Positions 2,916 through 63,204 of a stretch of 64,000 nt of DNA are shown here, in pieces. The position numbers were made by a program, and so were the translations under genes. Below the pieces are notes generated by a model. The model worked only from the letters and a program-made list of their open reading frames with translations, had not been told where the DNA came from and did no database searches. How positions within the stretch are numbered: the stretch's first letter is position 1; each line of letters opens with the position of its first letter. Location: the NCBI RefSeq assembly GCF_006345805.1, contig NC_043004.1, positions 31,310,001 to 31,374,000 of the forward strand, given 5' to 3'. Source of the stretch: Octopus sinensis. Taxonomy: Eukaryota.

Positions 2916-3156
2916 ATTCTATTGTGTCTGGGGAGAGTCATTTTCTTTTTGTGCCTTATTATGTAACACACTCACCAGTAAAATTTCCACGTTTTTCTTA
3001 TTTTTATTGTCCTAAAATTTTCGTTGCGTCTTGCAACCTTTTCAATAATTTTGACTTTTAGGGCAATAAAAATAAGAAAAACGTGGAAATTTTACCAGTG
3101 AGTGTGTTACATAATAAAGTACAAAAGAAAATTACTCTCCCCAGACACAATAGAAT
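2916..3156. mobile_element. Fold-back/MITE-like element, ~100-bp inverted arms
   Basis: 2916-3017 is the reverse complement of 3056-3156 apart from a few mismatches (attctattgtgtctggggagagt...actctccccagacacaatagaat). Confidence 0.8.
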
Positions 3157-6900: not shown

Positions 6901-8359
6901 TCCTCTGTAAATTTGAACTATATATACATACATATATATGTGTATGTGTGTGTGAGGGTGCATGGCTTAGTGGTTAGGACGCTACACTCACAGTTGCAAG
7001 ATTGTGGGTTCGATTCCCAGATTGGGCATTGTGTTGTATATATACATATATATATAATGATTAAGATGACTGGACGCAATTTAAAACCCAAAAGGAAAAA
7101 AACAGTCACTAAAAGTAACTATGAGTGTAGAGCATCACCAGCATTGCTAGAAACAAGAGTCAAAGACTATTTAGCCATGAACAAAGCACAGTTCTGTGTA
7201 CTGACAAGAGAGACAACCTCCAAACATCAAGCAAAGGCATCAAATTGGCACATCAATTTCACATGAAATTAATGCTTATCAGTGATGTTACTCCTCCGCT
7301 GGTGGTGAAGAGGAATTCCACTCGTCAGTATTTTTAGAATTTACCATAGGAATCAAAGGTTGATCCAGCAAAATGGTAATGTGAAAATTATAAAATGGTT
7401 AAGATGGTTAGACACAATTCAAAACTAAAATGGAAAAATGCACCATCACTAAAGGTGACAAGACAATTTGAGACTAATACATATAATAAATGCATGTATT
7501 TAAAAAAACTGAAGAACCATATTCACACACATAGAGAGATAAGAAAATGATGCCCACATCTATCTATAAAATTTGTAGAGACATATCCACAAAGATATGT
7601 ATAACAATATATACATACATACACACTTTTGTATTGATGAACAGGTACATAGATATATAGATGCATATATACATGTGTATTTACTCATCCACATAGTAAT
7701 CACACATGTATCTATGCATACACATATAGATGTACATACATCAAAACACATAGATGCACACATGACTACAGATATATGAATTAGATATTTGGTCATACAC
7801 TCAGACACACATTTTTGAGTATGGAGACAGATATGCTAATAGACATATGTTATGAGCTACTAACAGTTTCATAAATTGAAGATGTTATCTTGGCAGGTTT
7901 TAAAATATGCCTAGTGTCTCCAAGTAATCTTCAGTGTCTCTAGATAATCTCCAAAATTACTTGGAGTCACTAAGCACGTTTTAAAACCTACATAGATAAT
8001 ATCTTTAACTTATGAAACTATTAGTAGTTCTTAACTATATACTGTGCACATTAAGCAATATTTAAATCTCACTGGATAGAGCACTTTTTTGTTGATCTTA
8101 CCTTAACGAATAAGTAAACTGAGTGAGTGTGTGTGTGTATCAATATATTTATATATATTTTGTGTGTGTGTGTGTGTATGTGTGTGCACGAATAAGTATA
8201 TACGCATATCCATAAACACACCAAAGTGTATAGGCAAACGCACACGCAGACAACTTGTTCTCCTTTCATAAGTATTTATGTATATATTAACAGACAAAAT
8301 AGTTTAAAATGAGATGCTGGTTAAAGAATGAAAAAAAAAAAGAGGTAGAAAAATAAGAG

Positions 8360-9350: not shown

Positions 9351-9946
9351 ATATATATATATATATATTTGCATATATATAAAGACGATAAGAAATGGAG
9401 CAATTAAATCATGACTTTATGACATCTACTTCTTGCTGTTTATTGTTCCATTTCTTATCATCTTTATATATATTAAACCACGGTTTACCTTTTAAATTAC
9501 CTACTACCATATACCTTATAACAAGGACCATACATACTGAGATAATACCAGGAATGACTATTGATATATCTATCCATTAGATGGTTACATTACCTCTAAC
9601 TTATATGCATACATATGTATATTTACATCATCGCCAACCAGTGGTTGTCACACGCTGATGATAGGTTAATACTCAGAAACCCAGGTCCGTGTGTATCACA
9701 TCAAGCTGGAGATGGGAAGGATGACTTCCCTTTGCAAATACTGATTGGACACAGAAAGTGTGTCAATAGCCAGCTGGAGGAGATGTCTTCCTGGGGCTAC
9801 AAGCTACAGTAGCATCAACTCTTATGGGTTAGCCGCATTTAAGTGGCAAATATACTTCACGATATATATATTATATATATATATATATTATTATATATAT
9901 ATTATATATATCTGCATATATATGTATAAATATATATACTTGTGAA

Positions 9947-10500: not shown

Positions 10501-11227
10501 GTGTATGCACGTGTATATCTCTATGTATGTATTCACACACACATGCATCCACATATACATGTCTAACTTTATGGTGGAGAAGCAGTTTGCAGTGTATGTA
10601 TTTATATATATATATACACACACACGTGTGTGTATGTGTGTGTCAAAGTACAAAGAAAGTGAATATTTGAGGGGAAGAAAAAGGTGGTGGGGAGGAGGCT
10701 GAGCTGAAAGTATAGAGTGGAAATATGGAAGTAAGCTGTGTATAGGATGACAAATGTCATGGGAGCAGCATTAGGAGAGTCACAGGATCCTGTTCCTGTT
10801 CAGTTGAAATAGTAAGAGAGAGCCAGGAGAATGAGTGAGAGTGACAAAGGGTAGGAGAGAGAGAGAGAGATAAAGATAGACAGACAGTCAAAGAAGAAGA
10901 GCAACAGAGAGAGAGAGAGAGAGAGAGAGGAGAGTGAAAGACCAGCAGTGGTTGTGGGGTGCTAAAGAAGGTTAAGAGTAAGCACATTTATCATAAACAC
11001 ACACACACAAACACACACACCACTCACACACACACACTTGCATATACATTTTGGTACACACACATGCACAAGCAAATGCAGATACACATATACACGTGTG
11101 CATATATATGTGTGTGTGCTGCCTCTCAAATTCATGTACACACATACACATGCACATACTCACAGATACACATGAACACAAAGTACAGACTCATGCATAC
11201 ACACACACACACACTCTGACAACAATG

Positions 11228-11258
<31 letters not shown>

Positions 11259-11429
11259 CACCTACATATCAAACTGTCACACGCACTCAAGAGTACAGAC
11301 TCAGGCATACACACTTAGATTATTACATGCACAGTCACATATGCATAGTCATACACATATTCATAAAGACAGACAACGCACACTCACATACACACATACA
11401 TTTGTATATGTACATATGCACCATAGACA

Positions 11430-12270
11430 CACATGCACAGTTATATACACATTCATACAGACAATACACACACACACATACAAACATACAAATGCACAGG
11501 CACAAATGCACATACACACATGCACACACATACACACATACACACATACAAACACACACACACACATAAACAAATACACACATACACACACACACACACA
11601 CACATGCACACAAACATGCATGTGCACACACACACACAAACATACAAATGCACAGGCACATATGCACATACACACATGCACACACATACACACATACAAA
11701 CACACACACACACACACACACATAAACAAATACACACACACAAACGCACACATGCACACAAACATGCATGTGCACACACACACACAAACATACAAATGCA
11801 CTGGCACATATGCACATACACACATGCACACACATACACACATACAAACACACACACACATACACACACACACACACACATGCACACAAACATGCATGTG
11901 CACACACACACACAAACATACAAATGCACAGGCACATATGCACATACACACATGCACACACATACACACATACAAACACACACACACACACACACACATA
12001 AACAAATACACACACACAAACACACACATGCACACAAACATGCATGTGCACACACACAAACATACAAATGCACTGGCACATATGCACATACACACATGCA
12101 CACACATACACACATACAAACACACACACATAAACAAATACACACACACAAACACACACACACAAATGCACACACATATGCACACAAACATGCTTGTGCA
12201 CACACGCACACACACACAAACACACACACACACTCACACACACACAAACACACACACACAATCACACACA
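11430..12270. repeat. CA-rich higher-order minisatellite (~130-155-bp unit, about 5 copies)
   Basis: Anchor caaacatacaaatgcac(a/t)ggcaca recurs near 11481, 11637, 11786, 11913 and 12057. Confidence 0.85.
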
Positions 12271-12329
12271 CCTCAAAATAGTTTTGTTCTTAGTTCAGAG
12301 AGAGAGAGAGAGCAAGTAAGAAAATTCCA

Positions 12330-12630: not shown

Positions 12631-12654
12631 AAAGGAAGCTGGCAGTCATTGATA

Positions 12655-12790
12655 TGTGTGTATGTATGTATGTATGTATGTATGTATGTATGTATGTATG
12701 TATGTATGTATGTATGTTTGTATGTGTGTATGTATGTGTGTATGTGTGTATGTATGTATGTATGTGTGTATGTATGTATGTATGTATGTA

Positions 12791-12821
<31 letters not shown>

Positions 12822-13193
12822 ATGTATATATGTATGTAATATTTACATATGTATGTATGTATGTATGTGTATGTATGTACATATTTACATATGTATGTAT
12901 GTATGTAGTATGTATGCACATATATGTGTATGTATGCATTATGTATGTATGCATGCATGCATGTATGTATGTATGTATGTATGTGTGCATGTGTGTAGGT
13001 ATGTGTGTATGTATGCACGTATGCATGTATGTATGTGTGTATATGTATGCATGTATGTATATATGTATACGTATGTGTATGTGTATGTGTATGCATGTAT
13101 GAATGCTTGTATGTATGTATGTTTGTATGTGTGTATGTATGTGTATGTGTGTATGTATGTATGTATGTGTGTATGTATGTATGTATGTATGTA

Positions 13194-13224
<31 letters not shown>

Positions 13225-13545
13225 ATGTATATATGTATGTAATATTTACATATGTATGTATGTATGTATGTGTATGTATGTACATATATACGTATGTAGT
13301 ATTATGTATGCATGCATGCATGTATGTATGTATGTATGTGTGCATGTGTGTAGGTATGTGTGTATGTATGCACGTATGCATGTATGTATGCATATATCTA
13401 TGTATGTATGTGTGTATATGTATATATGTATGTATATGTATATATGTATACGTATGTGTGTATGTATGTGTGTATGTGTATGTATGCATGTATGAATGCT
13501 TGTATGTATGTATGTTAGTGTGTATGTATGTAGGTATGTAAGTAT
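12655..13545. repeat. (TATG)n-based compound satellite with an internal ~400-bp duplication
   Basis: gtatatatgtatgtaatatttacatatg occurs near 12825 and again near 13225, followed by matching variant blocks. Confidence 0.85.
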
Positions 13546-14068
13546 GAAAATGTGTGTGTGTGTGTGCGTGTATGTGTATATGTGTATATGTGTGTTGTTG
13601 TATACATGCAAGGGGTATTAATGATGAAATGCATGTGCATATGTGCATGTAATTTATTAATGAACTAGTATTTCTGGTATATATTAAATAAGAGTAATGT
13701 AAACATATAAAATTGAATGTGAAATTAGTGAGCTTGTGGAAATACTCACATGCACACTATATATATATATATAAATATAAAACTATATATATATATATAG
13801 ATATTATATATTATATATAATATATACACATATACATATATATATACATATATATATATAGATATATAGATATATATACAATATATATACATATATATAC
13901 ATTATATATACATATATAACATATAATATACATATATATATAACATATACATATATACATATATATATATATATATTATTATATAATATTATATATATAT
14001 ATATATATATCCATAATAATCTGTGTACATATATGTTTATGTATCCATATATATATATATATATTGAG

Positions 14069-17734: not shown

Positions 17735-18535
17735 TAAAAGAAATGAAGCCAGTATGCTCCACTGGATGTGTAATGTTGGTGTGCATACACAACAGAGTGT
17801 AAGTGCCCTGAGAGAAAAGTTGGACATAAGAAGCATCAGATGTTGTGCGTAAGAGAGACGACTGCACTGGTATGGTCATATGGTATGTGTTGGTATGTGT
17901 TGCATATGGATGAGGACAGCTTTGTGCACTGGTATGTGTTGCATATGGATGAGGACAGCTTTGTGAAGAAGTGTCACACCCTAACAGTGGAAGGAACCTA
18001 TGGAAGAGGTAGACCCAGGGAGACATGGGATGAGGTGGTGAAGCATGACCTTCAAACATTGGGCCTCACAGAGGCAATGACAAGCGACCAAGACACCTGG
18101 AGATATGCTGTGATTGAGAAGACTTGGCAAGTGAGATCATAGCTGTAGATGATGCCAGTGTCGCATAACCAGCCTGTTTAAAAGTACCCTTCAATCGTCA
18201 GGCAATATGCTGTGTTGAGAAACCCTGTTGAGTCAAGTGAAATCATAGTTGTAGCTGATGCCAGTGCCACCTGACTGGCACCTGTGTCGATGGTACATAA
18301 AAAAGAACCATTCAAGTGTGGTCAATGCCAGTGCCACCTGACTGGACCCTGTGCCAGTGACATGTAAAAATCACCCACTACTTGCAATGGTTGGCATTTG
18401 GAAGGGCATCCAGCTGTAGAAACCTTGCCAGATCAGATTGGAGCCTGGTGTAGCCTCCTGGCTTACCACTTCTTGATCAAACCGTCCAAACCATGCCAGG
18501 ATGGAAAGTGGACGTTAAACGATGATGATGATTTC
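17735..18535 (+). mobile_element. RTE-clade LINE 3' end with 3' UTR and (GAT)n tail
   Basis: WYVLHMDEDSFV (tandemly duplicated), GRGRPRETWDEVVKHDL; tail gtggacgttaaacgatgatgat. Confidence 0.9.
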
Positions 18536-19727: not shown

Positions 19728-20066
19728 GAGGTACATTAATGATTTAAAATAGTTTAAAATATTATATAATTTCTAAACATAAAAGCGATTTAAGACAATA
19801 TCAAAATTTTTTAAAGATTTGTAAAAAATCCTAAAAATATTTTCCCAAAATTATGGATATTGAATCTAAGAAGCATGTTGTACAAAATACTTCTTCGATT
19901 CAGCATGTACAATATGCTTCTTCGAGTCAACAGCTGTAATTTTAGGAAAATTCTTATTTTTAGGATCTTTTACAAATCTTTTAAAAATTTTAATATTATC
20001 TTAAAACGCTTTTATGTTTAGAAATTATACAATATTTTGAAATCTTTTAAATCTTTAATGTACCTC
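19728..20066. mobile_element. AT-rich fold-back/MITE-like element (~340 bp)
   Basis: gaggtacattaa...ttaatgtacctc; arms complementary over roughly 140 bp with scattered mismatches. Confidence 0.75.
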
Positions 20067-20074
20067 AATTGTTC

Positions 20075-23035
20075 ATCATCATCATCATCGTTTAACATTC
20101 ACTTTCCATGCTGGCATGGGTTGGACTGTTTGCCTGAGGACTAATAAGCCAGAAAGCTGCACCAGTCTCCAATCTGATCTGGCAAAGTTTCTACAGCTGG
20201 ATGCCCTTCCTAATGCCAACCACTCCGAGATTATAGAAGGTGCTTTTTATATGCCACCGGCATGAGGGTCAGTCAGGCTGTACTGGCATCAACCACGCTT
20301 GAATGATGCTTTTTACGTGCCACCAGCAGGACCAGTCAAGTGACAGTGACATCAACCAAGCTTGAATGGTGATTTTTTACGTGCCATTCAGGCAGTACTG
20401 TCATCAGCTGCGACAATGACTTCACTTGACTCAACAGGTCTTTGCAAGCACAGTTTAAAGCCCAATGATTGAAGAGTACTCTTAAATGGGCCAGTTATGC
20501 TGCACTGGCATAGGCCACAGTTATGGTCTCACTTGGCTTGCTGGGTTTTCTCAAGCACAGCATATATCCAAAGATCTCAATCACTTGTCATTACCTCTGT
20601 GAGGCCCAACTTCAAAGGTCGTGCTTCATCACCTCATTCCAGGTTTTCCTGGATCTACCTCTTCCACAGGTTCCCTCTACAGCTAGGGTGTGACACTTTT
20701 TCACACAGCTGTCCTCATCCATACACAACACATGACCATACCAGCACATTCATCCCTCTTTTCTTACCCAGCATTCATCACCATTTTGTATCTTCTGTTC
20801 AAACCAAAATAGTCCATATTTCTCCTCCATACAACGGCTCAAAGCCACTCAGTGCAGTTACATTCTACTTTGCTATATGAGTTGTCATGATCAATCCAAG
20901 AGATCATACCCAATCACATTCTATATATGCTTGTCTTTCACACAGAGAAGGGAACTCTTTATTTCTTTCCTTCCGTTTTTCTAACTAGATACTCTAACTA
21001 GATACTATCATTACAACTCCCTCTGGTATTAATAATGCCAGTTAAGAGAACATACCTACTGTCTGTAGTCTGCCACCTGATTATTTAAGGGTAAGTGCCA
21101 TTAATTAAGAAGAAGCATCGTTATCTCTGTGGTGCCTCTCCTGCTAACAACATCTGTCTTAGCAGGGAAAAGGATTACTTCTTAATCTGTAAGAGATCCC
21201 TCTGTACTCTTTGTATGTCCTTTCTTTCACTGAGTGCATGGTATGCATTTCATACATACATACTACTTTCCTTCATATCAAGCAACGTATTTATTCAAAC
21301 GATAACATTTAATATTTCTTTGCTACTTTACTCAAGTTCAAGGCGAATAAGGACAATCATCAGGAACTGAAGTTTTACATCTTTACACGCATACATAAAT
21401 ATATATATCTATATATACAAATTGAGATAGGGGTTGTAAATGCAACCCTCCATGGGATAACAATATCCATACTGCTAGTGAAGTACCCAACAAGGTTAAT
21501 ACATAAATGTTAAGGATTGTGATGCAATCAATTCATTTACTGTATTATATGGGCAAAGGTAAAATGTTTTTTATCTGGTAATTGATATTTGATTTAGATG
21601 TATTTCTCCATTTTCTTATTTTGTCCAACTTTTCTATCAGAGCACTTACACTTTGTCATGTATGCACACTGACATTACACATCCAGCAGAGCGTACTAGC
21701 TTCATTCCTTGCAAGTTTACACATGTCCTCGGCAGTCATGGCCCATGTTTCACTGCCATGTAGCATAGCTGTTCATACACATACGTCATACAGTCTACCT
21801 TTTACTCTGAGCAAGAGGCCCTTTGTCACCAGCAGAGTTAGGAACTCTCTGATCTTTGAGCAGGCTAATCTTATTCTAGCAGCTACACTGTCAGAGCATC
21901 CCCCACCCCCACTACTGACTTAGTCACCTAGGTAACAGAAACTATCAACTACTTCTAGTTTATTCCGCTGGCATGTGACGGAAGCTGTTTTCTGCACATT
22001 TTCAGTGTTTATTGCCCCTGAGCATTTACCACACACAAAAACTATCTTCCCAGTTAGTCTTCCTTTGATATTGCTGCACCTCTTGTGTATTCATAGCTTA
22101 CACTAGGTACATCTTGTGGAGTTTCTACCTACACCTTTTCTACAAATTGAGCAGGGCCATCTACCTGGTGGGATTTGTGATTTGTCTGCCTTTCTACTTA
22201 TTAAGACTTTGGTTTTTGCTAGATTGACTCTAAGGCCCTACGATTCTAGACCTTGCTTCCACACCTGAAACTTCTCTAGTTCTGATAGTGACTCAGCTAT
22301 TAGAACAAGGTCATCAGCATAGAGAAGCTCCCAGTGAGCATCCTGTCTTAAATTCCTCTGTTATTGCCTGGAGGACTATGATAAATAAGAGGGAGCTGAG
22401 GACTGAGCCTTGGTGGACCCCTACATCTACCCGGAATTCTTCACTGTACTCATTTCCAACCCTCACCTTACTGACAGCATCCCAGTACATGGCTTGTACA
22501 GCTCTCACTATCCACTCATCTATCCCTAGTTTCCACACTGACCACCACATAAGGGATCAAGGGACCCTGTCAAAGGCTTTCTCCATGTCATGAAAGCCAG
22601 GTACAGAGGTTTATTTTTGGCTAGGTATTTCTCCTGCAGCTATCTTACCAGAAATATAGCATCAGTGGTGCTTTTCCCTGGCACAAACCCAAACTGCATC
22701 TCATCTCAACCAACCCTCTCCCTAATTAGTTGGGCTGTGACCCTCTCTGTAACTTTCCTTACCTGATCCAACAACTTGATACCTCTGAAATTATTTATAT
22801 CTAATGCATCATCTTTACCTTTGTAGCAGCTGACTATGGTGCTGCTACACCAGTCATTGGGTATGACTCCTTCATATATCACCTGATTGACTATATGGGT
22901 GACTTGACTATAGCCGACACCGCCAGATATTTTAAGCATCTCTGCACACCTTCATTTTGAGATCACCAATACTTTATTATCTCACCTTCTTCCTAGCTCT
23001 CCTGTCTAACTACCTCTGTTCAGCCAGCTGCTATG
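20075..23035 (-). mobile_element. 5'-truncated RTE-clade LINE (RT to 3' tail), interrupted at 20759-21624
   Basis: RT motifs NFRGIKLLDQ, GVHQGSVLSSLLF, MLHGSETW; 3' end at 20500-20758 and (CAT)n tail near 20075-20090. Confidence 0.9.
20759..21624. repeat. Copy 1 of a direct duplication (~870 bp, near-identical to 24437-25312)
   Basis: Both begin ttttcttacccagcattcatcacc and end ctccattttcttattttgt. Confidence 0.95.
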
Positions 23036-30630: not shown

Positions 30631-31004
30631 GGAGCACTCCGTCGGTTACGACGATGAGGGTCCCAGCTGATACGATCAACAGAACAGCTTGCTCGTGGAA
30701 TTAACGTGCAAGTGGCTGAGCATCCCACAGACACGTGTACCCCTAACATAGTTCTCGAGGAGATTCAGCGTGACACAGAGTGTGACAAGGCTGGCCTTTT
30801 GAAATACAGGTACAACAGAAACAGGAAGAAAGAGTGAGAGAAAGTTATGGTGAAAGAGTACAGCAGGGTTCACCACCACCCCCTGCAGGAGCCTTGTGAA
30901 GCTTTAGGTGTTTTCGCTCAATAAACACTCACAATGCCCAGTCTGGGAATCGAAACCGCGATCCTATGACCGCGAGTCTGCTGCCCTAACCACTGGGCGA
31001 CTCC
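30631..31004 (-). mobile_element. tRNA-derived SINE family C1 with a 14-bp target-site duplication
   Basis: aaatagctggaata at 30617-30630 and 31005-31018; B-box-like gtttcgattccc. Confidence 0.9.
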
Positions 31005-31380
31005 AAATAGCTGGAATAAATACTGAAAGGTATTTTTTTCAGATACCCTAATGATTTTGTCAGTTACCACCTTATTTTTAATCATTAATAATACAAACTA
31101 AGCAGCAAACAATCTACTGCATATATAAGACACTAGTAGTAGTAGTAGTAGTAATCACAATAGTTGTAACAGTAGTATCAACAGCAGAAGTAATAGCAGT
31201 TGTAGTAGCATTAGCAACAGTGACAGACACACCAGCAGCAGCATTAGTAACAACAGTAACAGCAACAGCACCAACATTTGTAGCAGCAGTAGCATTAGCA
31301 TCAAGTAATAGCAACAACAGTTGCAGAATTAGCACCACCACCATCCCCCACCACCACCATCATCATCACCAGCATTGTCA

Positions 31381-31760
31381 GTGGAGGCACAATGGCCCAA
31401 TGGTTAGGGCAGCGGGCTCGCGGTTGGAGGATTGCGGTTTCGATTCCCAGACTGGGCGTTGTGTATGTTTATTGACCGAAAACACCTAAAGCTCCACGAG
31501 GCTCCGGCAGGGGGTGGTGGTGACCCCTGTTGTACTCTTTCACTACAACTTTCTCTAACTCTTTCTTCCTGTTTCCTGTCCCCGACTTCCTATGCAACTA
31601 CTGAGCCTGGATGCGCATTTATCCATCCGTCGATGCTCTCGGTGTCGGGGGTTGACCTGCTTTCTCTTCTGCGGGTCTTACAAATAGCAAAGGACCACGT
31701 TTTGGACTTCTCCCATTTTGCGAGCTCTGGGACGAAGACTGTTCGCTCAACAAACAACAG
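31381..31760 (+). mobile_element. tRNA-derived SINE family C2 (same head as C1, different tail)
   Basis: Near-identical to 59885-60280 (-). Confidence 0.85.
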
Positions 31761-32559: not shown

Positions 32560-32915
32560 GTGTGGTAAGTAGCTTGCTTACCAACCACATGGTTCTGGGT
32601 TCGTTACTATAGCCTTGGGCCGACCAAAGCCTTGTGAGTGGATTTGGTAGATGGAAACTGAAAGAAGCCCATCGTATATATGTATATATATGTGTGTGTA
32701 TATGTTTGTGTGTCTGTGTCTGTGTTTGTCCCCGCAACATGGCTTGACAACCAATGCTGATATGATTACATCCCCATAACTTAGCGGTTCGGCAAAAGAG
32801 ACTGATAGAATAAGAACTAGGCTTACAAAGAATAAGTCCTGGGGTCGATTTGCTCGACTAAGGGTGGTGCTCGAGCATGGCCGCAGTCAAATGACCGAAA
32901 CAAGTAAAAGAGTAA
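32560..32915 (+). mobile_element. tRNA-derived SINE family A with long tail
   Basis: Matches 8360-8760. Confidence 0.85.
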
Positions 32916-34204
32916 AGAGAGAGTAGTACTAGATCCACATAAAAGAACACCCAATATTTCCTTCAAGGTAGTTGGCATTTGGAAGGGCATCCAGCTGTAA
33001 AAGCCATTCCCAAGTAGATACTGGCGTTCAGTGCAGTCTTCTGATTCTCAATGTAGAGAATACCAGCATAGAAAATGGCTGTTCAATGATGATGATGATG
33101 ATGAAAGGGTTTGCATTCATGGCATTTGCATGTCCACTTCTTGTTGGAGAAGATTTTGTTGTTTGCAGGGAATACTAAATGATTGTGTAGAAGGTTTCTT
33201 TTTTACTGAATATTCTTCACTAACATGTAGTAAGTCTAAAATTCATTCTTTATCATTCATTTATCATTCTATGCTTGTTTTTGTTTTTCATACTAGCATG
33301 AGTGAGATGAATATATTATTGAAGCACCGCTTTACAACTTAATCACTTCCTGTTGCTAACATTTAAACAATAATAATTTTGGTTGCTTCAAAGTATTGCA
33401 AAATCTGAAAATAATCTTTTTAGAAAGCTCAAATAAAAATAACGAAGCTATAAAATAAATAACTCAGAAAATATCAGGTAGAATGCTCTTAGATGGGAAA
33501 AAAAAGAGGACAGAATCACCTACAAGAATTGGACCATCCACCTGCTGTAGTCCACTTGAGTGTGATGACTAACTACTAAAATAAGGAGAAACTGACATCT
33601 AATTAAAAGTTTTAAGTATATAAACAATATGTGAATAAATTTCTTTTGGTTTGTTTGTAGCGTTTAGATATGTAAAATAAAATTAATGAGTAATAATAAC
33701 AGTATGAATAATAACTGGTGAGACCTGTGAAAATTCCACAGAACAAAAAAGATTAAGAGAAGCTACTTAAGATAGACAAGATGATTTGCATTTTTATTTT
33801 TATGCTAAGCTTTTATAGTGATGTATAATTTTCATATCTTATCACATTTATTGATAGTTATTAAAGCCTGTAACTTCTGTTGCCTTAATTTCAGGACACA
33901 CTGTATGTGTATATTTTTTTTTTACTTGTTTCAACCATTTGACTGTGGCCATGCTGGAGCACCACCTTTAGTCAAAGAAATCAACCCCAGGACTTATTCT
34001 TTGTAAGCCTAGTACTTATTCTATCGATCTCTTTTGCCAAATGGCTAAGTTACGTATACACACCAATATTGGTTGGCCCAAGGCTATAGTAGAAGATACT
34101 TGCCCAAGGTGCCATGCAGTGGGACTGAACCCGGAACCATGTGGTTGGTAAACAAGCTACTTACAACACAGTCACTCCTTCACCTATATATATGTGTGTG
34201 TGCG

Positions 34205-58189: not shown

Positions 58190-59473
58190 TTAGGTTGTTC
58201 CTAAAATAATGGCCAATTTCAAAAACACTATTTTACTCTGGAAAAATTAACAATAGAAATGTTTTGATTAGTCAAAGTATGAGCCATGAACATCTATGCA
58301 TTTCTGCCATCAATCAGCAAGATTATTTATGCCTTGTTGGTAAAATCTTATTGGCTTTGATGCTAAGAAATCTTTTAAAACTGATTCCACCTCTGGTTTA
58401 GACCTGAAAGTTTTATCATTTAAAAACTTGTTTAAATGCTTTAAAAGATGGTAGTCAGTGAGTGAACAATTAGGAGAATATCGAGGATGTGGTAAAGTAT
58501 TGTATCCCAAGTCTGTGAGTTTCTGCAGTGTCATTCTTGCAACATGTAGTTTGCATTATCATGGAGCAGAATTGGGCCATTCCGATTCACCAATGCAGGT
58601 CGCATTTTTCACAAGTGAGCATGCATTTCAGTGAGTTGATTGCAGTAAACCTCTGTTGTAATGCTCTGATTAGCTTCTAGAAAGCTGTAATAGATAACAC
58701 CAATTGCAGACCACTAGACAGTCATCATAATCTTTTGCTGATGCAACTTTGGCTTTGGGAAATGTTTGGGGGACTCATCACGATCAAGCCATTGACCTGA
58801 TTGTTTATGGTTATCATAAAGGATCTACTTTTTATCACAAGTCACTATTCGGTCAAGAAAAGGATCATTGCCATTTCACCGAAAGAGCATCAAGCACACT
58901 TCAAAATGCCAAACTTTTTAATTTTCATTGAGCTCATGCAGTACCCATTTTTCAAGCTTTTTCATCTTACCAATCTTCTGCAGACTGCGTGAGACCATTG
59001 CAATACCAACACCAAGTGCTTGAGATATTTCTCTGACACTTCGACATGGGTTTTGTTCAACAGTTGCTTTCAATTTTTCATTGTCAAGACTGCATGACCG
59101 TCCTCTACCTTCTTCATCTTCAAGGCTCTCGTCACCACTATGAAATTTCTGAAACCACCTTCGTACTGTGCAATCACTTTTGGACCCTTCTCCCCATGCT
59201 CTGTTGATATTGACAGCAGTTTGGGAGGAACTGAGCCCAAGCTTCAACTCCTGCAAGAAAAGTAAGCAAAGGTCCTTTTTTTGTCATGTTCATAATTAAA
59301 GGCACCTATACTTCAAGAATGTTTTCTGTCTGAAATAAGTAGAAAATTATTAAAAAGCATACATCAATTATTAAGTATGTCAAAATTCACCTAAAATATA
59401 ATTAAAATACTATGATAAAATTGCATTTCAAAACATAACACTTAGAGCGGCCATTATTTTTGGAACAACCTAA
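58190..59473 (-). mobile_element. Full-length (1284 bp) Hsmar1/SETMAR-like mariner; transposase inactivated
   Basis: TIRs ttaggttgttcctaaaataatggcc / ggccattatttttggaacaacctaa (1 mismatch) with TA on both sides; VRRWFQKFHSGDESLEDEEGRGR, KWVLHEL, PHPRYSPNCSLTDYHL. Confidence 0.95.
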
Positions 59474-59884: not shown

Positions 59885-60280
59885 TTTGTTTGTTTGTTGA
59901 GCGAAGCGGTCTTCGTCCCAGAGCTCACAAGATCGCGCCTCTGTAGTGGGAGAAGTCCGAAACGTGGTCCTTTGCTATTCGTAAGACCCACAGAAGAGAA
60001 AGCAGGTCAACCCCCGACACCGAGAGCATTGACGGATGGATGAATGCGCATTCAGGCTCAGCAGTTGCATAGGAAGTTGGGGACAAGAAACAGGAAGAAA
60101 GAGTGAGAGAAGGTTGGAGCGAAAGAGTACAACAGGGGTCACCACCACCCTCTGCCGGAGCCTCGTGGAGCTTTAGGTGTTTTCGCTCAATAAACACTCA
60201 CAACGCCCAGTCTGGGAATCGAAACCGCGATCCTCCGACCATGAGTCCACTGCCCTAACCATTGGGCCATTGGGCCTCCA
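59885..60280 (-). mobile_element. tRNA-derived SINE family C2
   Basis: Reverse complement matches 31381-31760. Confidence 0.85.
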
Positions 60281-60676
60281 CTACTGCTGTTATATAAACC
60301 TAGGTCACTTCTGAAGGAGCAGTCTTCTTGTATGTGGGTACTTGACTGAACAGCTAGAAATGATCTGGTTTTTTTTCCAGTTTTTCCCAGTTATACTATA
60401 TCTCTACCCTAATGTGAACTATACTGAACTCTGCAATATGCAGTGATGGATTGTGTAAAATACAGTTTGGACATATCACAAACCCCCTCACTATCCACTT
60501 CTGCCTGTCTGTAGATTTCAATGGTAGCAGGGTTCACATCTGGTCATTTCTCCCTTTTTGGATACATTTTACCATACCACAAACACTAGAGACATCAGTT
60601 ACAATAAGACTAAACTGTCCCCTCAACAATGCATTAAGTTTTTTTTTCTTCCCAGAATCCAAATAGAACCCTTTTA

Positions 60677-60897
60677 TATTACATACAGAGGCAACCATTA
60701 GTATTCCCAGTAGCTTTACATTGCTATTAAGAATTCATTGATAGTTAAAACACCTCCTTTATATTGTAAAGAGGTACTGTTTATTTTTCATCTTTGGTAC
60801 CTCTTTACAATATAAAGGAGGTGTTTTAACTATCAATGAATTCTTAATAGCAATGTAAAGCTACTGGGAATACTAATGGTTGTCTCTGTATGTAATA
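60677..60897. repeat. Long near-perfect inverted repeat: 101-bp arms, 19-nt loop
   Basis: 60677-60777 is the reverse complement of 60797-60897 except for G60691/T60883. Confidence 0.95.
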
Positions 60898-63204
60898 ACT
60901 AGTTAGTTATAACTACCAAAGAAGCTGACAGTAACAATCTTTAAGTGTCACTGAGTGGTCACCTTAACTTTTGAGAAACTTAAAAGAGTCCTCTTAAAGC
61001 AAAAGTTATAAAACATAGCTATGTAACAATACAATATAATTATAAAATAAGTTTTCCCTCTTCCAAATAGCTGAGAAGTAATTTATGTAAACCTTGAAAA
61101 TAAGTACGATATTTGTAAAAGCGATAGTTAATCGTCAATTATGTTTTGAATTAATATTTTGATTGATACAGATTCAGTCAGTGAATTACTAAGTTTATTC
61201 ATCGAAATAACTAAAAGAGCAGTTTTCTGCTGGTCACTAAATTTTTACATATTTGATTCCCAATTTGCATAATTTTTCTGGGATGTTTAATTTTCCTTTT
61301 TATCCTTTATTAGTACTCACTTGCTCGATAAATGAATTTAAAATTATACCTAATAGTATTAGAATTTATGAAGAAATCAGGTGTTATATTACTTTAACTT
61401 AGCCAAGTTAATTTCTCTCTTTTAAACAAATTCAAAGGTAACCCATCCTCTGCATGGTATTTTAGTATTCTAGAAATAGCAGTGATCATTTGGGTATATT
61501 CTAAGGTTTATAGCATACCAAATAACCTAACCAACAAATTTTCCTCTGGTTTTTTTTTTTTTGTATCTTCAGCTACCTCAGGGAAATTTCATAATCCAGA
61601 AGGGAAAGGGTGGAATAGTCCTCGAATATAATTTTTTGTTTGCAACACCTTTGTAATCTACATCATCAGAATGTGAAAGTTATAAGGAAACAAAGTTTAG
61701 GCATGTAGTTTATCTGAAACTCCTCCATCTTTGAAAAATTTTTCAGAAATAATTCCAATATAATCATAATCTACACTGAGAGGTATTTGTAAAAAATTTC
61801 ATTAGAAAATATCCATTTTTCAGAAAGTTATGAGGAAACAAAGTCAGGGGATAGGGAAAATACTTTGGGAGAAAGGAAATTAGGCAAGCTTATATTTTGT
61901 ACAATTGACATAAATAAATTAAAACTACTTTTCTTCTTCGGCTTTCTATTTCTTCAAAAACACCCAACAAATATATGAAAGGATATTGGAATTAGCATAA
62001 TTTGGTTAATGTTGGATTAAACTTATAATTTGGAGAAATGGTTTTACTGTTATGTCTGTAGATAGTAGCACAATGAAGTGTATGTGAAAGAGAAAGAAGA
62101 ATGAGAGAGAACGCTATTCTGCAATTTTAAAAATTAATGCTAACTCACAATGAATTAAAATTAATTTTCTGCTATTGAAATCTTCAGTAGTAAAAAATTC
62201 TTGAAAATCACATTTTGATAAAAAAAAAAAATATACTAAAATTAGAATTTTCACCCATTTTCTAGACAGTGTAGACTTTAATAATTGCTTTCTTTTAGTA
62301 AAATGACATACTCCCAACAAATTAAGCAGCTTTCTTCGTTAGATATAAATTGTAATTTAACAAATGGTTAGTCGTTGTTGCATAAGCTTTGATAAAAATG
62401 ATCAAACCATATGGTCAAAAATGATCCAACCATAACAAGCCATATTTCTGGACATATATTATCTGAGATTACCTTATTTGTTTTTTTTTTCTTCTTTTTC
62501 TTTCAATAGATTGCGATTTGAGGAAGATTTGAATTTTAGTCTTTTTTTTTTTTTTTTTTCCCATTGCAAGTCAAGTCACCATATAGAAGTCCCTAATCCA
62601 ATACATCAGTTAATTATAAGATCTAATTTAAAACAGTTTGTGTGTGTGTTGAATGAGAATATATAAAGATATATTTGCAATAAAAACTGAAATTGTGGAA
62701 AGCCATGGATGCTAGCTAAAAACGCAATAATGTCTGCTAGTAACTGAATTCAACTGAAGTTATCATCTGAAATATTATCTGAAAAGTTGCAACTTTAAAA
62801 TACTAACATATTTTGTATTGCATATTTTTCTTCTCTGCATTATACCACTAAGAATAATTAATACTTTTTAATTTCAGCAAAATATTTATTCACATTTTAA
62901 TTAACCTTTTAAATTTATTTATTTCAAGGGACACACTTTAATTTTAACAAAATTATTACAATTTAACTCTCCACTCTGTTCTTGGCATGTTCTGTATGTA
63001 TAAATAATATACATTCTTTTTTTAGGCCTTGCTGTCACCATCGGAGAGAAGTGGGGTATATATAAATATGTTTATATAATCTTTGACATATTTAAATTGC
63101 CTTTTCTTTTTTTGCATGGGTTTAAAGTTGTGTTTTAACACGCTGCGAGTCAGTGTTTCAGGTTTCCATTAGTTGGAAACTATCCCTGTCTTGCACAGTT
63201 TATA

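What the first reader, a model, noticed from the sequence alone, without database searches (positions are those of the whole stretch)
60677..60897. Almost perfect 101-bp hairpin in non-repeat-like sequence: candidate hairpin-RNA (endo-siRNA / young miRNA / ADAR substrate) locus
Seen: two 101-bp arms around a 19-nt loop with a single difference (G60691 vs T60883). That pair is a G-U wobble if the + strand is transcribed, so a + RNA would form an uninterrupted 101-bp duplex. I do not recognise the arms as any repeat in this window and see no TSD. Established: long dsRNA hairpins are Dicer and ADAR substrates, and coleoid cephalopods have very extensive A-to-I editing and many lineage-specific miRNAs. 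Inference: a very recent inverted duplication, the proposed route to new small-RNA genes. A fold-back MITE or an assembly fold-back is also possible.
Basis: partly seen in the sequence, partly recalled or inferred. Interest (0 to 1): 0.72.

Follow-up and report, generated by a model that had tools for sequence, protein, structure and literature searches.

The report
Young 221-bp palindrome in octopus DNA
A real, almost perfect 101-bp-arm inverted repeat sits in transposon-rich non-coding DNA of an octopus-type genome; it is most likely a young fold-back mobile element or a local inverted duplication, a kind of hairpin already known to be common in octopus genomes, and not a demonstrated small-RNA gene.

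Summary
Arms 60677-60777 and 60797-60897 pair at 100 of 101 positions around a 19-nt loop. The one difference (G60691/T60883) is a G:U pair only in + strand RNA. The structure is far beyond chance (z = -33).

The window is octopod DNA full of transposon remains. It shares SINE and mariner repeats with Octopus sinensis and O. bimaculoides.

The palindrome ends in TA...TA, which fits the target duplication of a Tc1/mariner-type fold-back MITE. That match has about a 9% chance of occurring anyway. I found no second copy in the window or in about 51 kb of other Octopus sequence. Genome-wide copy number and the orthologous empty site could not be tested.

An assembly fold-back is unlikely: both flanks are unique, there is no gap, the loop is asymmetric and the arms differ at one base.

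The window holds three more unrelated whole-length palindromes of 196-339 bp, with arms 83-97% alike. Published work reports that octopus is exceptionally rich in long, near-perfect dsRNA-forming loci, at roughly one per 64 kb.

Molluscs appear to lack an endo-siRNA pathway, and the hairpin is not miRNA-shaped. Incidental ADAR hyper-editing, if it is transcribed, is the most plausible consequence. Interest is low to moderate.

The parts
60677..60777 (.). Left arm of the inverted repeat (101 nt). It carries G60691, the only position that differs from the right arm.
60778..60796 (.). Non-palindromic spacer or loop of 19 nt (TGTTTATTTTTCATCTTTG). In + strand RNA two G:U pairs shorten it to 15 nt. 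It contains a TTTTT run on the + strand.
60797..60897 (.). Right arm (101 nt), the reverse complement of the left arm except at T60883.
60677..60678 (.). Left TA. It is the outermost dinucleotide of the palindrome and a candidate TA target-site duplication. The element proper would then be 60679-60895, beginning TTACATACAGAGG.
   Evidence: The TA dinucleotide frequency in the window is 0.093, so the chance match is about 9%.
60896..60897 (.). Right TA, the candidate second copy of the TA target-site duplication.
58190..59473 (-). Context only, not part of the hairpin. A degenerate 1284-bp mariner copy with TIRs TTAGGTTGTTCC... and TA on both sides. It shows that TA-targeting transposases have acted at this locus. 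Its ends do not resemble the hairpin ends.
   Evidence: (Pfam HTH_48, 'HTH domain in Mos1 transposase', E = 1e-9)
59890..60282 (.). Context only. A SINE-type repeat copy 395 bp upstream. Other copies lie at 30817-30998 and 31380-31757 and in Octopus loci L002 and L006.

Best explanation
This is a genuine and evolutionarily young whole-length palindrome in transposon-rich, apparently non-coding DNA of an octopod. It measures 221 bp, or 217 bp plus a TA on each side.

The most likely origin is a fold-back MITE: a non-autonomous cut-and-paste DNA element that consists almost entirely of its two terminal inverted repeats. A Tc1/mariner-type transposase would have inserted it at a TA dinucleotide and duplicated that TA. 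One difference in 101 bp puts the insertion on the order of 1 million years ago, and under about 8 million years on a simple clock.

It has no coding capacity and there is no evidence of a selected function. If it lies inside a longer Pol II transcript, either strand would fold into a duplex of about 101-103 bp. That duplex would most probably be hyper-edited and unwound by ADAR, as happens with other young palindromic repeats. It would not feed an siRNA pathway, which molluscs appear to lack. It would not be cropped as a canonical miRNA precursor.

Shown: the structure, its statistical significance, the TA ends, the unique flanks, the octopod and repeat-rich context, and the absence of relatives in every collection searched. 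Inferred: that it is mobile, the transposase superfamily, its age, and all RNA-level consequences.
For: - Structure and significance.
- The palindrome ends exactly in TA...TA, and no other TSD type fits: there is no 8-bp, TTAA or TWA direct repeat at or within +/-4 bp of the ends.
- It has the size, A+T richness (30% G+C) and lack of open reading frames typical of MITEs. The longest stop-free stretch is 37 codons.
- A mariner with TA flanks lies 1.2 kb away.
- In O. vulgaris, Tc1-Mariner is the TIR superfamily with the most recently active families (73 families, 1553 insertions at 2% or less divergence). The same pipeline also reports 65 single-insertion 'MITE' entries averaging about 196 bp (PMC13282606, read).
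- Base rate. In O. bimaculoides, 0.44% of random 50-bp loci have a >95% identical reverse-oriented match of at least 40 bp within 2 kb. That is exceptionally high among 19 species (PMC5625713) and amounts to roughly one such structure per 64 kb.
- My own scan with that criterion finds five complex-sequence dsRNA-capable structures in this window.
- Three more unrelated whole-length palindromes of 196-339 bp are present in the window.
- Precedent. The most edited repeat in Xenopus tropicalis is a palindromic Harbinger MITE of about 200 bp. The figured example is 221 bp, with 65 of 77 adenosines edited (PMC5625713).
- A-to-I editing mainly targets dsRNA from young repeats (PMC9989829).
- No siRNA machinery or endo-siRNAs were found in molluscs (PMC12479628).
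Against: - The defining property of a transposable element, multiple dispersed copies, was not shown. There is no second copy in the 64-kb window. There is none in about 51 kb of sequenced O. sinensis and O. bimaculoides DNA (72 kb of fetched loci, 9.5 kb of it N and the rest Logan contigs of unknown organism), where ordinary SINE-type repeats recur many times.
- TA is palindromic, so it is absorbed into any palindrome, and it occurs by chance about 9% of the time.
- The hairpin ends (TTACATACAGAGG...) do not resemble the TIRs of the mariner copies in the window.
- Two of the three comparison palindromes in the window (2916-3156 and 19728-20066) have no recognisable TSD at all. This hints that a TSD-less process also makes such structures here.
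- Arm identity may also be kept high by template switching between arms (PMC13100816 abstract). The age estimate is therefore soft.
Confidence: 0.5

Rival explanations
1. De novo local inverted duplication that is not a transposon. A replication template switch or fold-back priming at a break copied about 101 bp of pre-existing unique sequence in reverse complement, 19 nt away from the source. This would create a perfect hairpin in a single mutational event. One arm and the loop would be ancestral and the other arm new.
For: - The arm is single-copy in everything that could be searched.
- There is no TSD other than the ambiguous TA.
- The window contains three other whole-length palindromes of unrelated sequence with similar geometry. 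Arms are about 83-155 nt, loops 21-38 nt and arm identity 83-97%. Two of them have no TSD. That is what a recurrent mutational process would leave behind.
- Template switching is documented to create perfect hairpins in one step, and to have seeded over 6,000 hairpins and at least 18 miRNA genes in primates (PMC10710096).
Against: - The documented template-switch hairpins discussed in that paper are of miRNA-precursor size. A 101-bp copy is long for that process.
- Ending exactly on TA...TA is expected for a Tc1/mariner insertion but has only about a 9% chance here.
- Mollusc and octopus genomes carry many low-copy TIR and MITE families (PMC13282606). Missing a second copy in about 115 kb (the window plus about 51 kb of Octopus sequence) is therefore expected even for families of thousands of copies.
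Confidence: 0.33
2. Assembly artefact: a fold-back produced by chimeric reads or by the assembler, and not present in the animal.
For: Such artefacts exist in octopus assemblies. The fetched O. bimaculoides locus L002 has a 262-bp, 100% perfect, zero-loop palindrome at 11225-11486 that directly abuts a run of N.
Against: - The focal structure looks quite different from that artefact. The window has no N at all.
- Unique sequence continues on both sides, so two switches exactly 101 bp apart would be needed.
- The centre is a 19-nt asymmetric spacer rather than a pivot point.
- The arms differ at one base.
Confidence: 0.05
3. A functional small-RNA gene: a hairpin-RNA (endo-siRNA) locus or a very young miRNA gene, whatever its mutational origin.
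For: - The perfect long stem has a strand asymmetry, G:U on the + strand against A.C on the - strand.
- Octopus has gained 90 novel miRNA families of unknown source (PMC9699675).
- Palindromic mariner-derived MITEs (Made1) gave rise to the human mir-548 family (PMC1784062 abstract).
Against: - Molluscs have a single miRNA-type Dicer, no siRNA-type Dicer or Argonaute, and no endo-siRNA signal, including in O. bimaculoides (PMC12479628).
- A 221-nt hairpin with a perfect 101-103-bp stem is not the imperfect precursor of about 60-70 nt that Drosha crops.
- No Rfam family reaches its threshold. The sub-threshold hits are long-stem plant MIR families matched on structure alone (MIR161, 60 bits against 90 required).
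- The arms have no protein-level match, so there is no evident coding target gene.
- Twelve-mers from the arm are absent from the supplementary files held for the octopus miRNA paper. This is weak evidence, because those files may hold no sequences.
- One difference in 101 bp gives no sign of selection either way.
Confidence: 0.05

Closest known systems
Palindromic Harbinger MITE of about 200 bp in Xenopus tropicalis, the most hyper-edited repeat in that genome (Porath et al. 2017, PMC5625713)
   Same: Both are whole-length palindromes of about 220 bp; the published example is 221 bp. Each folds on its own into a tight dsRNA with a short loop. Each is non-coding and sits in a genome singled out for an exceptional abundance of long near-perfect dsRNA.
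   Different: The frog element is a high-copy family with a consensus and a PIF/Harbinger affiliation (3-bp TWA duplication, from my own knowledge), and its editing has been measured. Here the ends are TA, the copy number is unknown and editing is untested.
Made1 MITEs and the hsa-mir-548 family (Piriyapongsa and Jordan 2007, PMC1784062)
   Same: Made1 is a mariner-related fold-back MITE that is nearly all TIR. It forms a hairpin when transcribed and is the standard example of a MITE becoming a small-RNA gene.
   Different: Made1 is about 80 bp, which is miRNA-precursor size. It is present in many copies and has demonstrated mature miRNAs (sizes and copy number from my own knowledge of that paper). 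The element here is 221 bp with a stem of about 101 bp. It is unlike the local mariner TIRs and has no expression data.
Template-switch-generated hairpins and de novo miRNAs (Monttinen et al. 2023, PMC10710096)
   Same: A perfect inverted repeat with a short spacer is created in unique sequence in one event. There is no target-site duplication, and mismatches accumulate afterwards.
   Different: Those events were inferred from ancestral reconstructions and yield miRNA-sized hairpins. Here no outgroup sequence was available and the arm is 101 bp.
Drosophila hairpin-RNA (hpRNA) loci that yield Dicer-2/AGO2 endo-siRNAs (Okamura et al. 2008 and Czech et al. 2008, from my own knowledge)
   Same: Both are long, near-perfect intramolecular dsRNA hairpins encoded by a genomic inverted repeat.
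   Different: hpRNA function needs a dedicated siRNA Dicer and Argonaute, which were not found in molluscs (PMC12479628). hpRNA arms are typically homologous to target genes, and no such homology was found here.
Assembly fold-back palindrome, for example O. bimaculoides locus L002 11225-11486
   Same: Both are near-perfect palindromes of a few hundred bp in an octopus assembly.
   Different: The artefact-like case is 100% perfect, has no spacer and abuts an N gap. The focal hairpin has a 19-nt asymmetric spacer, one mismatch and unique sequence on both sides, with no gap.

Membership tests
MITE / fold-back non-autonomous DNA transposon (Tc1/mariner-type) | Terminal inverted repeats at both ends | tested here: met
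   The arms are 101 nt and 100 of 101 positions are complementary. The whole element is TIR plus a 19-nt spacer.
MITE / fold-back non-autonomous DNA transposon (Tc1/mariner-type) | Target-site duplication of the superfamily (TA) | tested here: inconclusive
   TA is present at both ends (60677-78 and 60896-97). However, TA is self-complementary and cannot be told apart from the palindrome. The chance expectation is about 9%.
MITE / fold-back non-autonomous DNA transposon (Tc1/mariner-type) | Small size and no coding capacity | tested here: met
   It is 221 bp. No ORF of 30 aa or more starts inside it, the longest stop-free stretch is 37 codons, and no protein relative was found.
MITE / fold-back non-autonomous DNA transposon (Tc1/mariner-type) | Multiple dispersed copies in the genome | tested here: inconclusive
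   No second copy was found in the 64-kb window or in about 51 kb of sequenced Octopus DNA. This sample could only detect families of tens of thousands of copies. The genome itself was not searchable.
MITE / fold-back non-autonomous DNA transposon (Tc1/mariner-type) | Ends related to those of an autonomous partner element | tested here: not met
   The hairpin ends TTACATACAGAGG... do not resemble the TIR TTAGGTTGTTCC... of the mariner at 58190-59473. They also match nothing around the second mariner-like fragment at 54.9-55.6 kb. Other Tc1/mariner families of the genome could not be examined.
Hairpin-RNA (endo-siRNA) locus | Genomic inverted repeat that folds into long dsRNA | tested here: met
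Hairpin-RNA (endo-siRNA) locus | Host has a dedicated siRNA Dicer/Argonaute pathway and makes endo-siRNAs | not testable with these tools
   The literature argues against it. No siDicer, siAgo or endo-siRNA signal was found in molluscs, including O. bimaculoides (PMC12479628).
Hairpin-RNA (endo-siRNA) locus | Arms homologous to a target gene | tested here: not met
   A six-frame translation of 60440-61110 gave no hit at E <= 1 among 5.8 billion proteins. That collection demonstrably holds O. sinensis and O. bimaculoides proteins. Non-coding targets could not be tested.
Hairpin-RNA (endo-siRNA) locus | Transcription and phased 21-23-nt small RNAs | not testable with these tools
   No expression data were available.
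Canonical animal miRNA gene | Imperfect hairpin precursor of about 60-70 nt, or membership of a curated family | tested here: not met
   It is a 221-nt hairpin with a perfect stem of 101-103 bp. Rfam gave 0 matches at gathering thresholds in the window. Only sub-threshold matches to long-stem plant MIR models were found.
ADAR hyper-editing substrate (self-folding palindromic repeat) | Long near-perfect intramolecular duplex (at least 40 bp, >95% identity, partner within 2 kb) | tested here: met
   The criterion is taken from PMC5625713.
ADAR hyper-editing substrate (self-folding palindromic repeat) | Transcribed, with clustered A-to-G mismatches in RNA | not testable with these tools
   No RNA-seq data were available.
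Assembly fold-back artefact | Lies at a contig end or gap, with everything beyond the pivot mirrored and no asymmetric spacer | tested here: not met
   The window has no N. Both flanks are unique, the spacer is 19 nt and asymmetric, and there is one mismatch. Contrast L002 11225-11486.
Template-switch / fold-back inverted duplication | The ancestral or orthologous sequence carries one arm only | not testable with these tools
   No orthologous locus could be retrieved.

The most novel reading that the evidence does not exclude
The hairpin is not a transposon. It is the youngest product of a recurrent, TSD-less inverted-duplication process (replication template switching or fold-back repair) that keeps creating hairpins with arms of about 100 nt and loops of 20-40 nt in octopod genomes. 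This 64-kb window alone would hold four unrelated products, with ages of roughly 1 to 27 million years on a simple clock. Such a process would be a direct mutational source of the unusually large pool of ADAR substrates in coleoids, and possibly of their lineage-specific miRNAs.
Probability: 0.25. Interest if true: 0.6.

Novelty: new member of a known kind. Interest (0 to 1): 0.22.

Why it matters
On its own the locus is ordinary for an octopus genome. Published counts predict about one long near-perfect inverted repeat per 64 kb, and palindromic repeats that fold into ADAR substrates are already described.

Its value is as a clean, datable test case, with 1 difference in 101 bp and unique flanks. 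A single genome-wide search plus one orthologous site would show whether octopus dsRNA-forming loci arise by MITE insertion or by in-situ inverted duplication. One stranded RNA-seq track would show whether a perfect 100-bp duplex is edited, diced or ignored in an animal that appears to lack an siRNA pathway.

Tried and rejected
1. Copy number through public collections. Exact arm patterns found nothing in viral contigs, bacterial and archaeal genomes, or JGI metagenomes. These collections hold no cephalopod DNA, so the result is uninformative.

2. Six-frame composite of 60440-61110 as a protein query. The aim was to catch spurious ORFs from other copies or other assemblies. There was no hit at E <= 1. 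This rules out derivation from a coding exon but says little about copy number.

3. Exact-protein look-ups of three ORFs next to the hairpin, to fetch independent assemblies of the locus. Nothing is on record.

4. A composite query of 14 transposon ORFs. It failed because only the 8000 candidates sharing the most words were scored, and it returned one irrelevant hit. A clean mariner query then worked.

5. ENA protein P0067 as a possible same-species contig. Locus L005 shares only the mariner with the window, so it is not octopod.

6. Relation of the hairpin ends to the mariner TIRs in the window: none.

7. Internal direct or inverted sub-repeats in the arm, which would mark IR/DR-type transposase sites: none.

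8. TSDs other than TA (hAT 8 bp, piggyBac TTAA, PIF TWA and others): none above chance.

9. tRNA scan and Rfam at gathering thresholds: nothing. Rfam in E-value mode gave only structure-driven, sub-threshold matches to long-stem plant MIR families.

10. Arm 12-mers in the supplementary files of the octopus miRNA paper: none found, and those files may contain no sequences.

11. Host-gene exons in the window, to place the hairpin in an intron or UTR. Only transposon-derived ORFs were recognisable.

Full report
**1. Observation**

- Two 101-nt arms (60677-60777 and 60797-60897) are complementary at 100 of 101 positions around a 19-nt spacer.
- The single exception is G60691 opposite T60883.
- As RNA, the + strand forms an uninterrupted stem. 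Two G:U pairs extend it into the spacer. The energy is -173.9 kcal/mol, against -45 +/- 4 for dinucleotide shuffles (z = -33).
- The - strand has an A.C mismatch at that position and folds at -167.8 kcal/mol.
- As DNA the hairpin is also extreme (-110.5 kcal/mol, z = -32).
- Chance is excluded.
- Neither arm occurs anywhere else in the window.

**2. Whose genome, and what surrounds the hairpin**

The window has 36% G+C, contains no N and is full of microsatellites. Every recognisable reading frame is transposon-derived:
- reverse transcriptase, integrase and LINE endonuclease fragments;
- a Mos1-type HTH domain.

I saw no host exon.

A 1284-bp degenerate mariner lies at 58190-59473. It has TIRs TTAGGTTGTTCC... 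and TA on both sides. A SINE-type repeat lies at 59890-60282.

Proteins related to the mariner include annotated Octopus sinensis and O. bimaculoides entries. The loci fetched around them (L001, L002, L006) share dozens of interspersed repeats with the window at 70-94% identity. A non-octopod contig carrying the same mariner shares nothing else.

The window is therefore octopod DNA, but the species is not fixed. The immediate flanks (60283-60676 and 60898-63200) are unique in everything I could search.

**3. Is it an artefact?**

Probably not. A fold-back produced by chimeric reads or by an assembler mirrors everything beyond a pivot and typically ends a contig. Locus L002 of the O. bimaculoides assembly contains just such a case: a 262-bp, 100% perfect, zero-spacer palindrome that abuts a run of N.

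The focal structure differs in four ways:
- unique sequence continues on both sides;
- there is no gap;
- the centre is a 19-nt asymmetric spacer;
- the arms differ at one base.

Read-level confirmation is still needed.

**4. Origin**

Two explanations remain open, and I could not separate them decisively.

*(a) Fold-back MITE*
- The palindrome ends exactly in TA...TA. This is what a TA target-site duplication of a Tc1/mariner-type element looks like.
- No other TSD type fits.
- Size, A+T richness and lack of coding capacity all fit.
- TA-targeting transposases have acted 1.2 kb away.
- In O. vulgaris, Tc1-Mariner is the TIR superfamily with the most recently active families. The same annotation lists 65 single-insertion 'MITE' entries of about 196 bp on average (PMC13282606).
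- Against: TA has about a 9% chance expectation. The ends do not resemble the local mariner TIRs. No second copy was seen in the window or in about 51 kb of other Octopus sequence. That sample could only have detected a family of tens of thousands of copies.

*(b) In-situ inverted duplication by template switching or fold-back priming*
- This process makes perfect hairpins in one step and leaves no TSD (PMC10710096).
- The window contains three further whole-length palindromes of unrelated sequence and similar geometry:
  - 2916-3156: arms about 101 nt, 91-97% identity, loop 38 nt;
  - 7845-8040: arms 83 nt, 83% identity, loop 21 nt;
  - 19728-20066: arms about 155 nt, 83-91% identity, loop 21 nt.
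- A short fourth example lies at 9373-9473.
- Two of the three longer ones lack any TSD.
- This pattern fits either many low-copy MITE families or a recurrent mutational process.

I put (a) at about 0.5 and (b) at about 0.33.

**5. Age**

The O. vulgaris study equates a Jukes-Cantor distance of 0.09 with 25 million years. One difference in 101 bp between the arms then corresponds to about 1.4 million years. The Poisson range is about 0.03-8 million years. The other palindromes would be roughly 10, 17 and 27 million years old. Homogenisation of arms by template switching could make all of these underestimates (PMC13100816 abstract).

**6. What it would do**

Nothing here shows transcription. 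If the locus is transcribed, a perfect duplex of 101-103 bp is the preferred ADAR substrate.
- A-to-I editing across Metazoa mainly targets dsRNA formed by young repeats (PMC9989829).
- Octopus and Xenopus have the strongest hyper-editing signals among the species compared.
- In octopus, 0.44% of random 50-bp loci have a near-perfect reverse-oriented partner within 2 kb (PMC5625713). That is about 280 qualifying positions per 64 kb, roughly one structure like this per window.
- My own scan with that criterion flags 1.27% of this window, TA microsatellites included, and finds five complex-sequence structures. The focal one is the longest and cleanest.
- The frog's most edited repeat is a self-folding palindromic MITE whose figured example is also 221 bp.

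The endo-siRNA reading is disfavoured. Molluscs, including O. bimaculoides, have one miRNA-type Dicer, no siRNA-type Dicer or Argonaute, and no endo-siRNA signal (PMC12479628). The arms also match no protein.

The miRNA reading is disfavoured by shape, because a perfect 100-bp stem is not a Drosha substrate. It is also disfavoured by the absence of any Rfam family match. The source of the 90 octopus-specific miRNA families remains unknown (PMC9699675), and Made1/mir-548 shows the route exists (PMC1784062).

**7. Verdict**

The locus is a new example of a known kind: a young, self-folding palindromic repeat or duplication in a genome already known to be exceptionally rich in them.

It matters mainly as a clean test case for how such hairpins arise in octopods. 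The decisive tests could not be run with the tools at hand:
- genome-wide copy number;
- the orthologous empty or half site;
- long reads across the locus;
- RNA-seq and small-RNA-seq.

Noticed in passing
window 2916-3156; 7845-8040; 19728-20066; 9373-9473: There are four more whole-length palindromes of complex, mutually unrelated sequence. Arms are about 101, 83, 155 and 35 nt, arm identity is 83-97% and loops are 21-38 nt. None has a copy in the window or in the fetched Octopus loci. The first and third have no recognisable TSD. That is about one such structure per 16 kb in this window.
   Followed up: partly
L002 11225-11486 (O. bimaculoides GCA_001194135.2, CM046612.1): A 262-bp, 100% perfect, zero-spacer palindrome directly abuts a run of N. 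It looks like an assembly fold-back artefact. Such artefacts could inflate published estimates of dsRNA-forming potential that were computed on this assembly line.
   Followed up: no
window 58190-59473 (- strand): A degenerate mariner with intact TIRs and TA/TA flanks. Its closest proteins (65-73% identity) come from a Logan run, the amphipod Trinorchestia longiramus (dozens of copies) and Octopus. The pattern suggests horizontal spread of this mariner lineage between crustaceans and cephalopods.
   Followed up: partly
window 30818-30998 / 31395-31575; 18388-18450 / 20160-20222; 32803-32851 / 33978-34026: These are inverted pairs of interspersed repeats 0.4-1.7 kb apart, with stretches at 90-95% identity. 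They are further potential dsRNA-forming structures of the classical 'two inverted SINEs' type.
   Followed up: no
L001 4632-5060 (O. sinensis): A 429-bp element with 32-bp TIRs and a perfect 8-bp target-site duplication AGTCTTTC, which makes it a hAT-type MITE. It shows what a clear TSD looks like in this genus.
   Followed up: no
window 60640-60655 (+ strand): A polypyrimidine tract followed by CAG (TTTTTTTTCTTCCCAG) lies 21 nt upstream of the hairpin and looks like a 3' splice acceptor. If it is real, the hairpin would lie in an exon or UTR of a + strand transcript. It could equally be chance in A+T-rich DNA.
   Followed up: no
window 11447-12271 and 12653-13603: A large CA-rich compound microsatellite is followed by a TATG/TG-rich array. 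Together they form a long imperfect inverted repeat of about 70% identity and give many spurious long ORFs on both strands.
   Followed up: no
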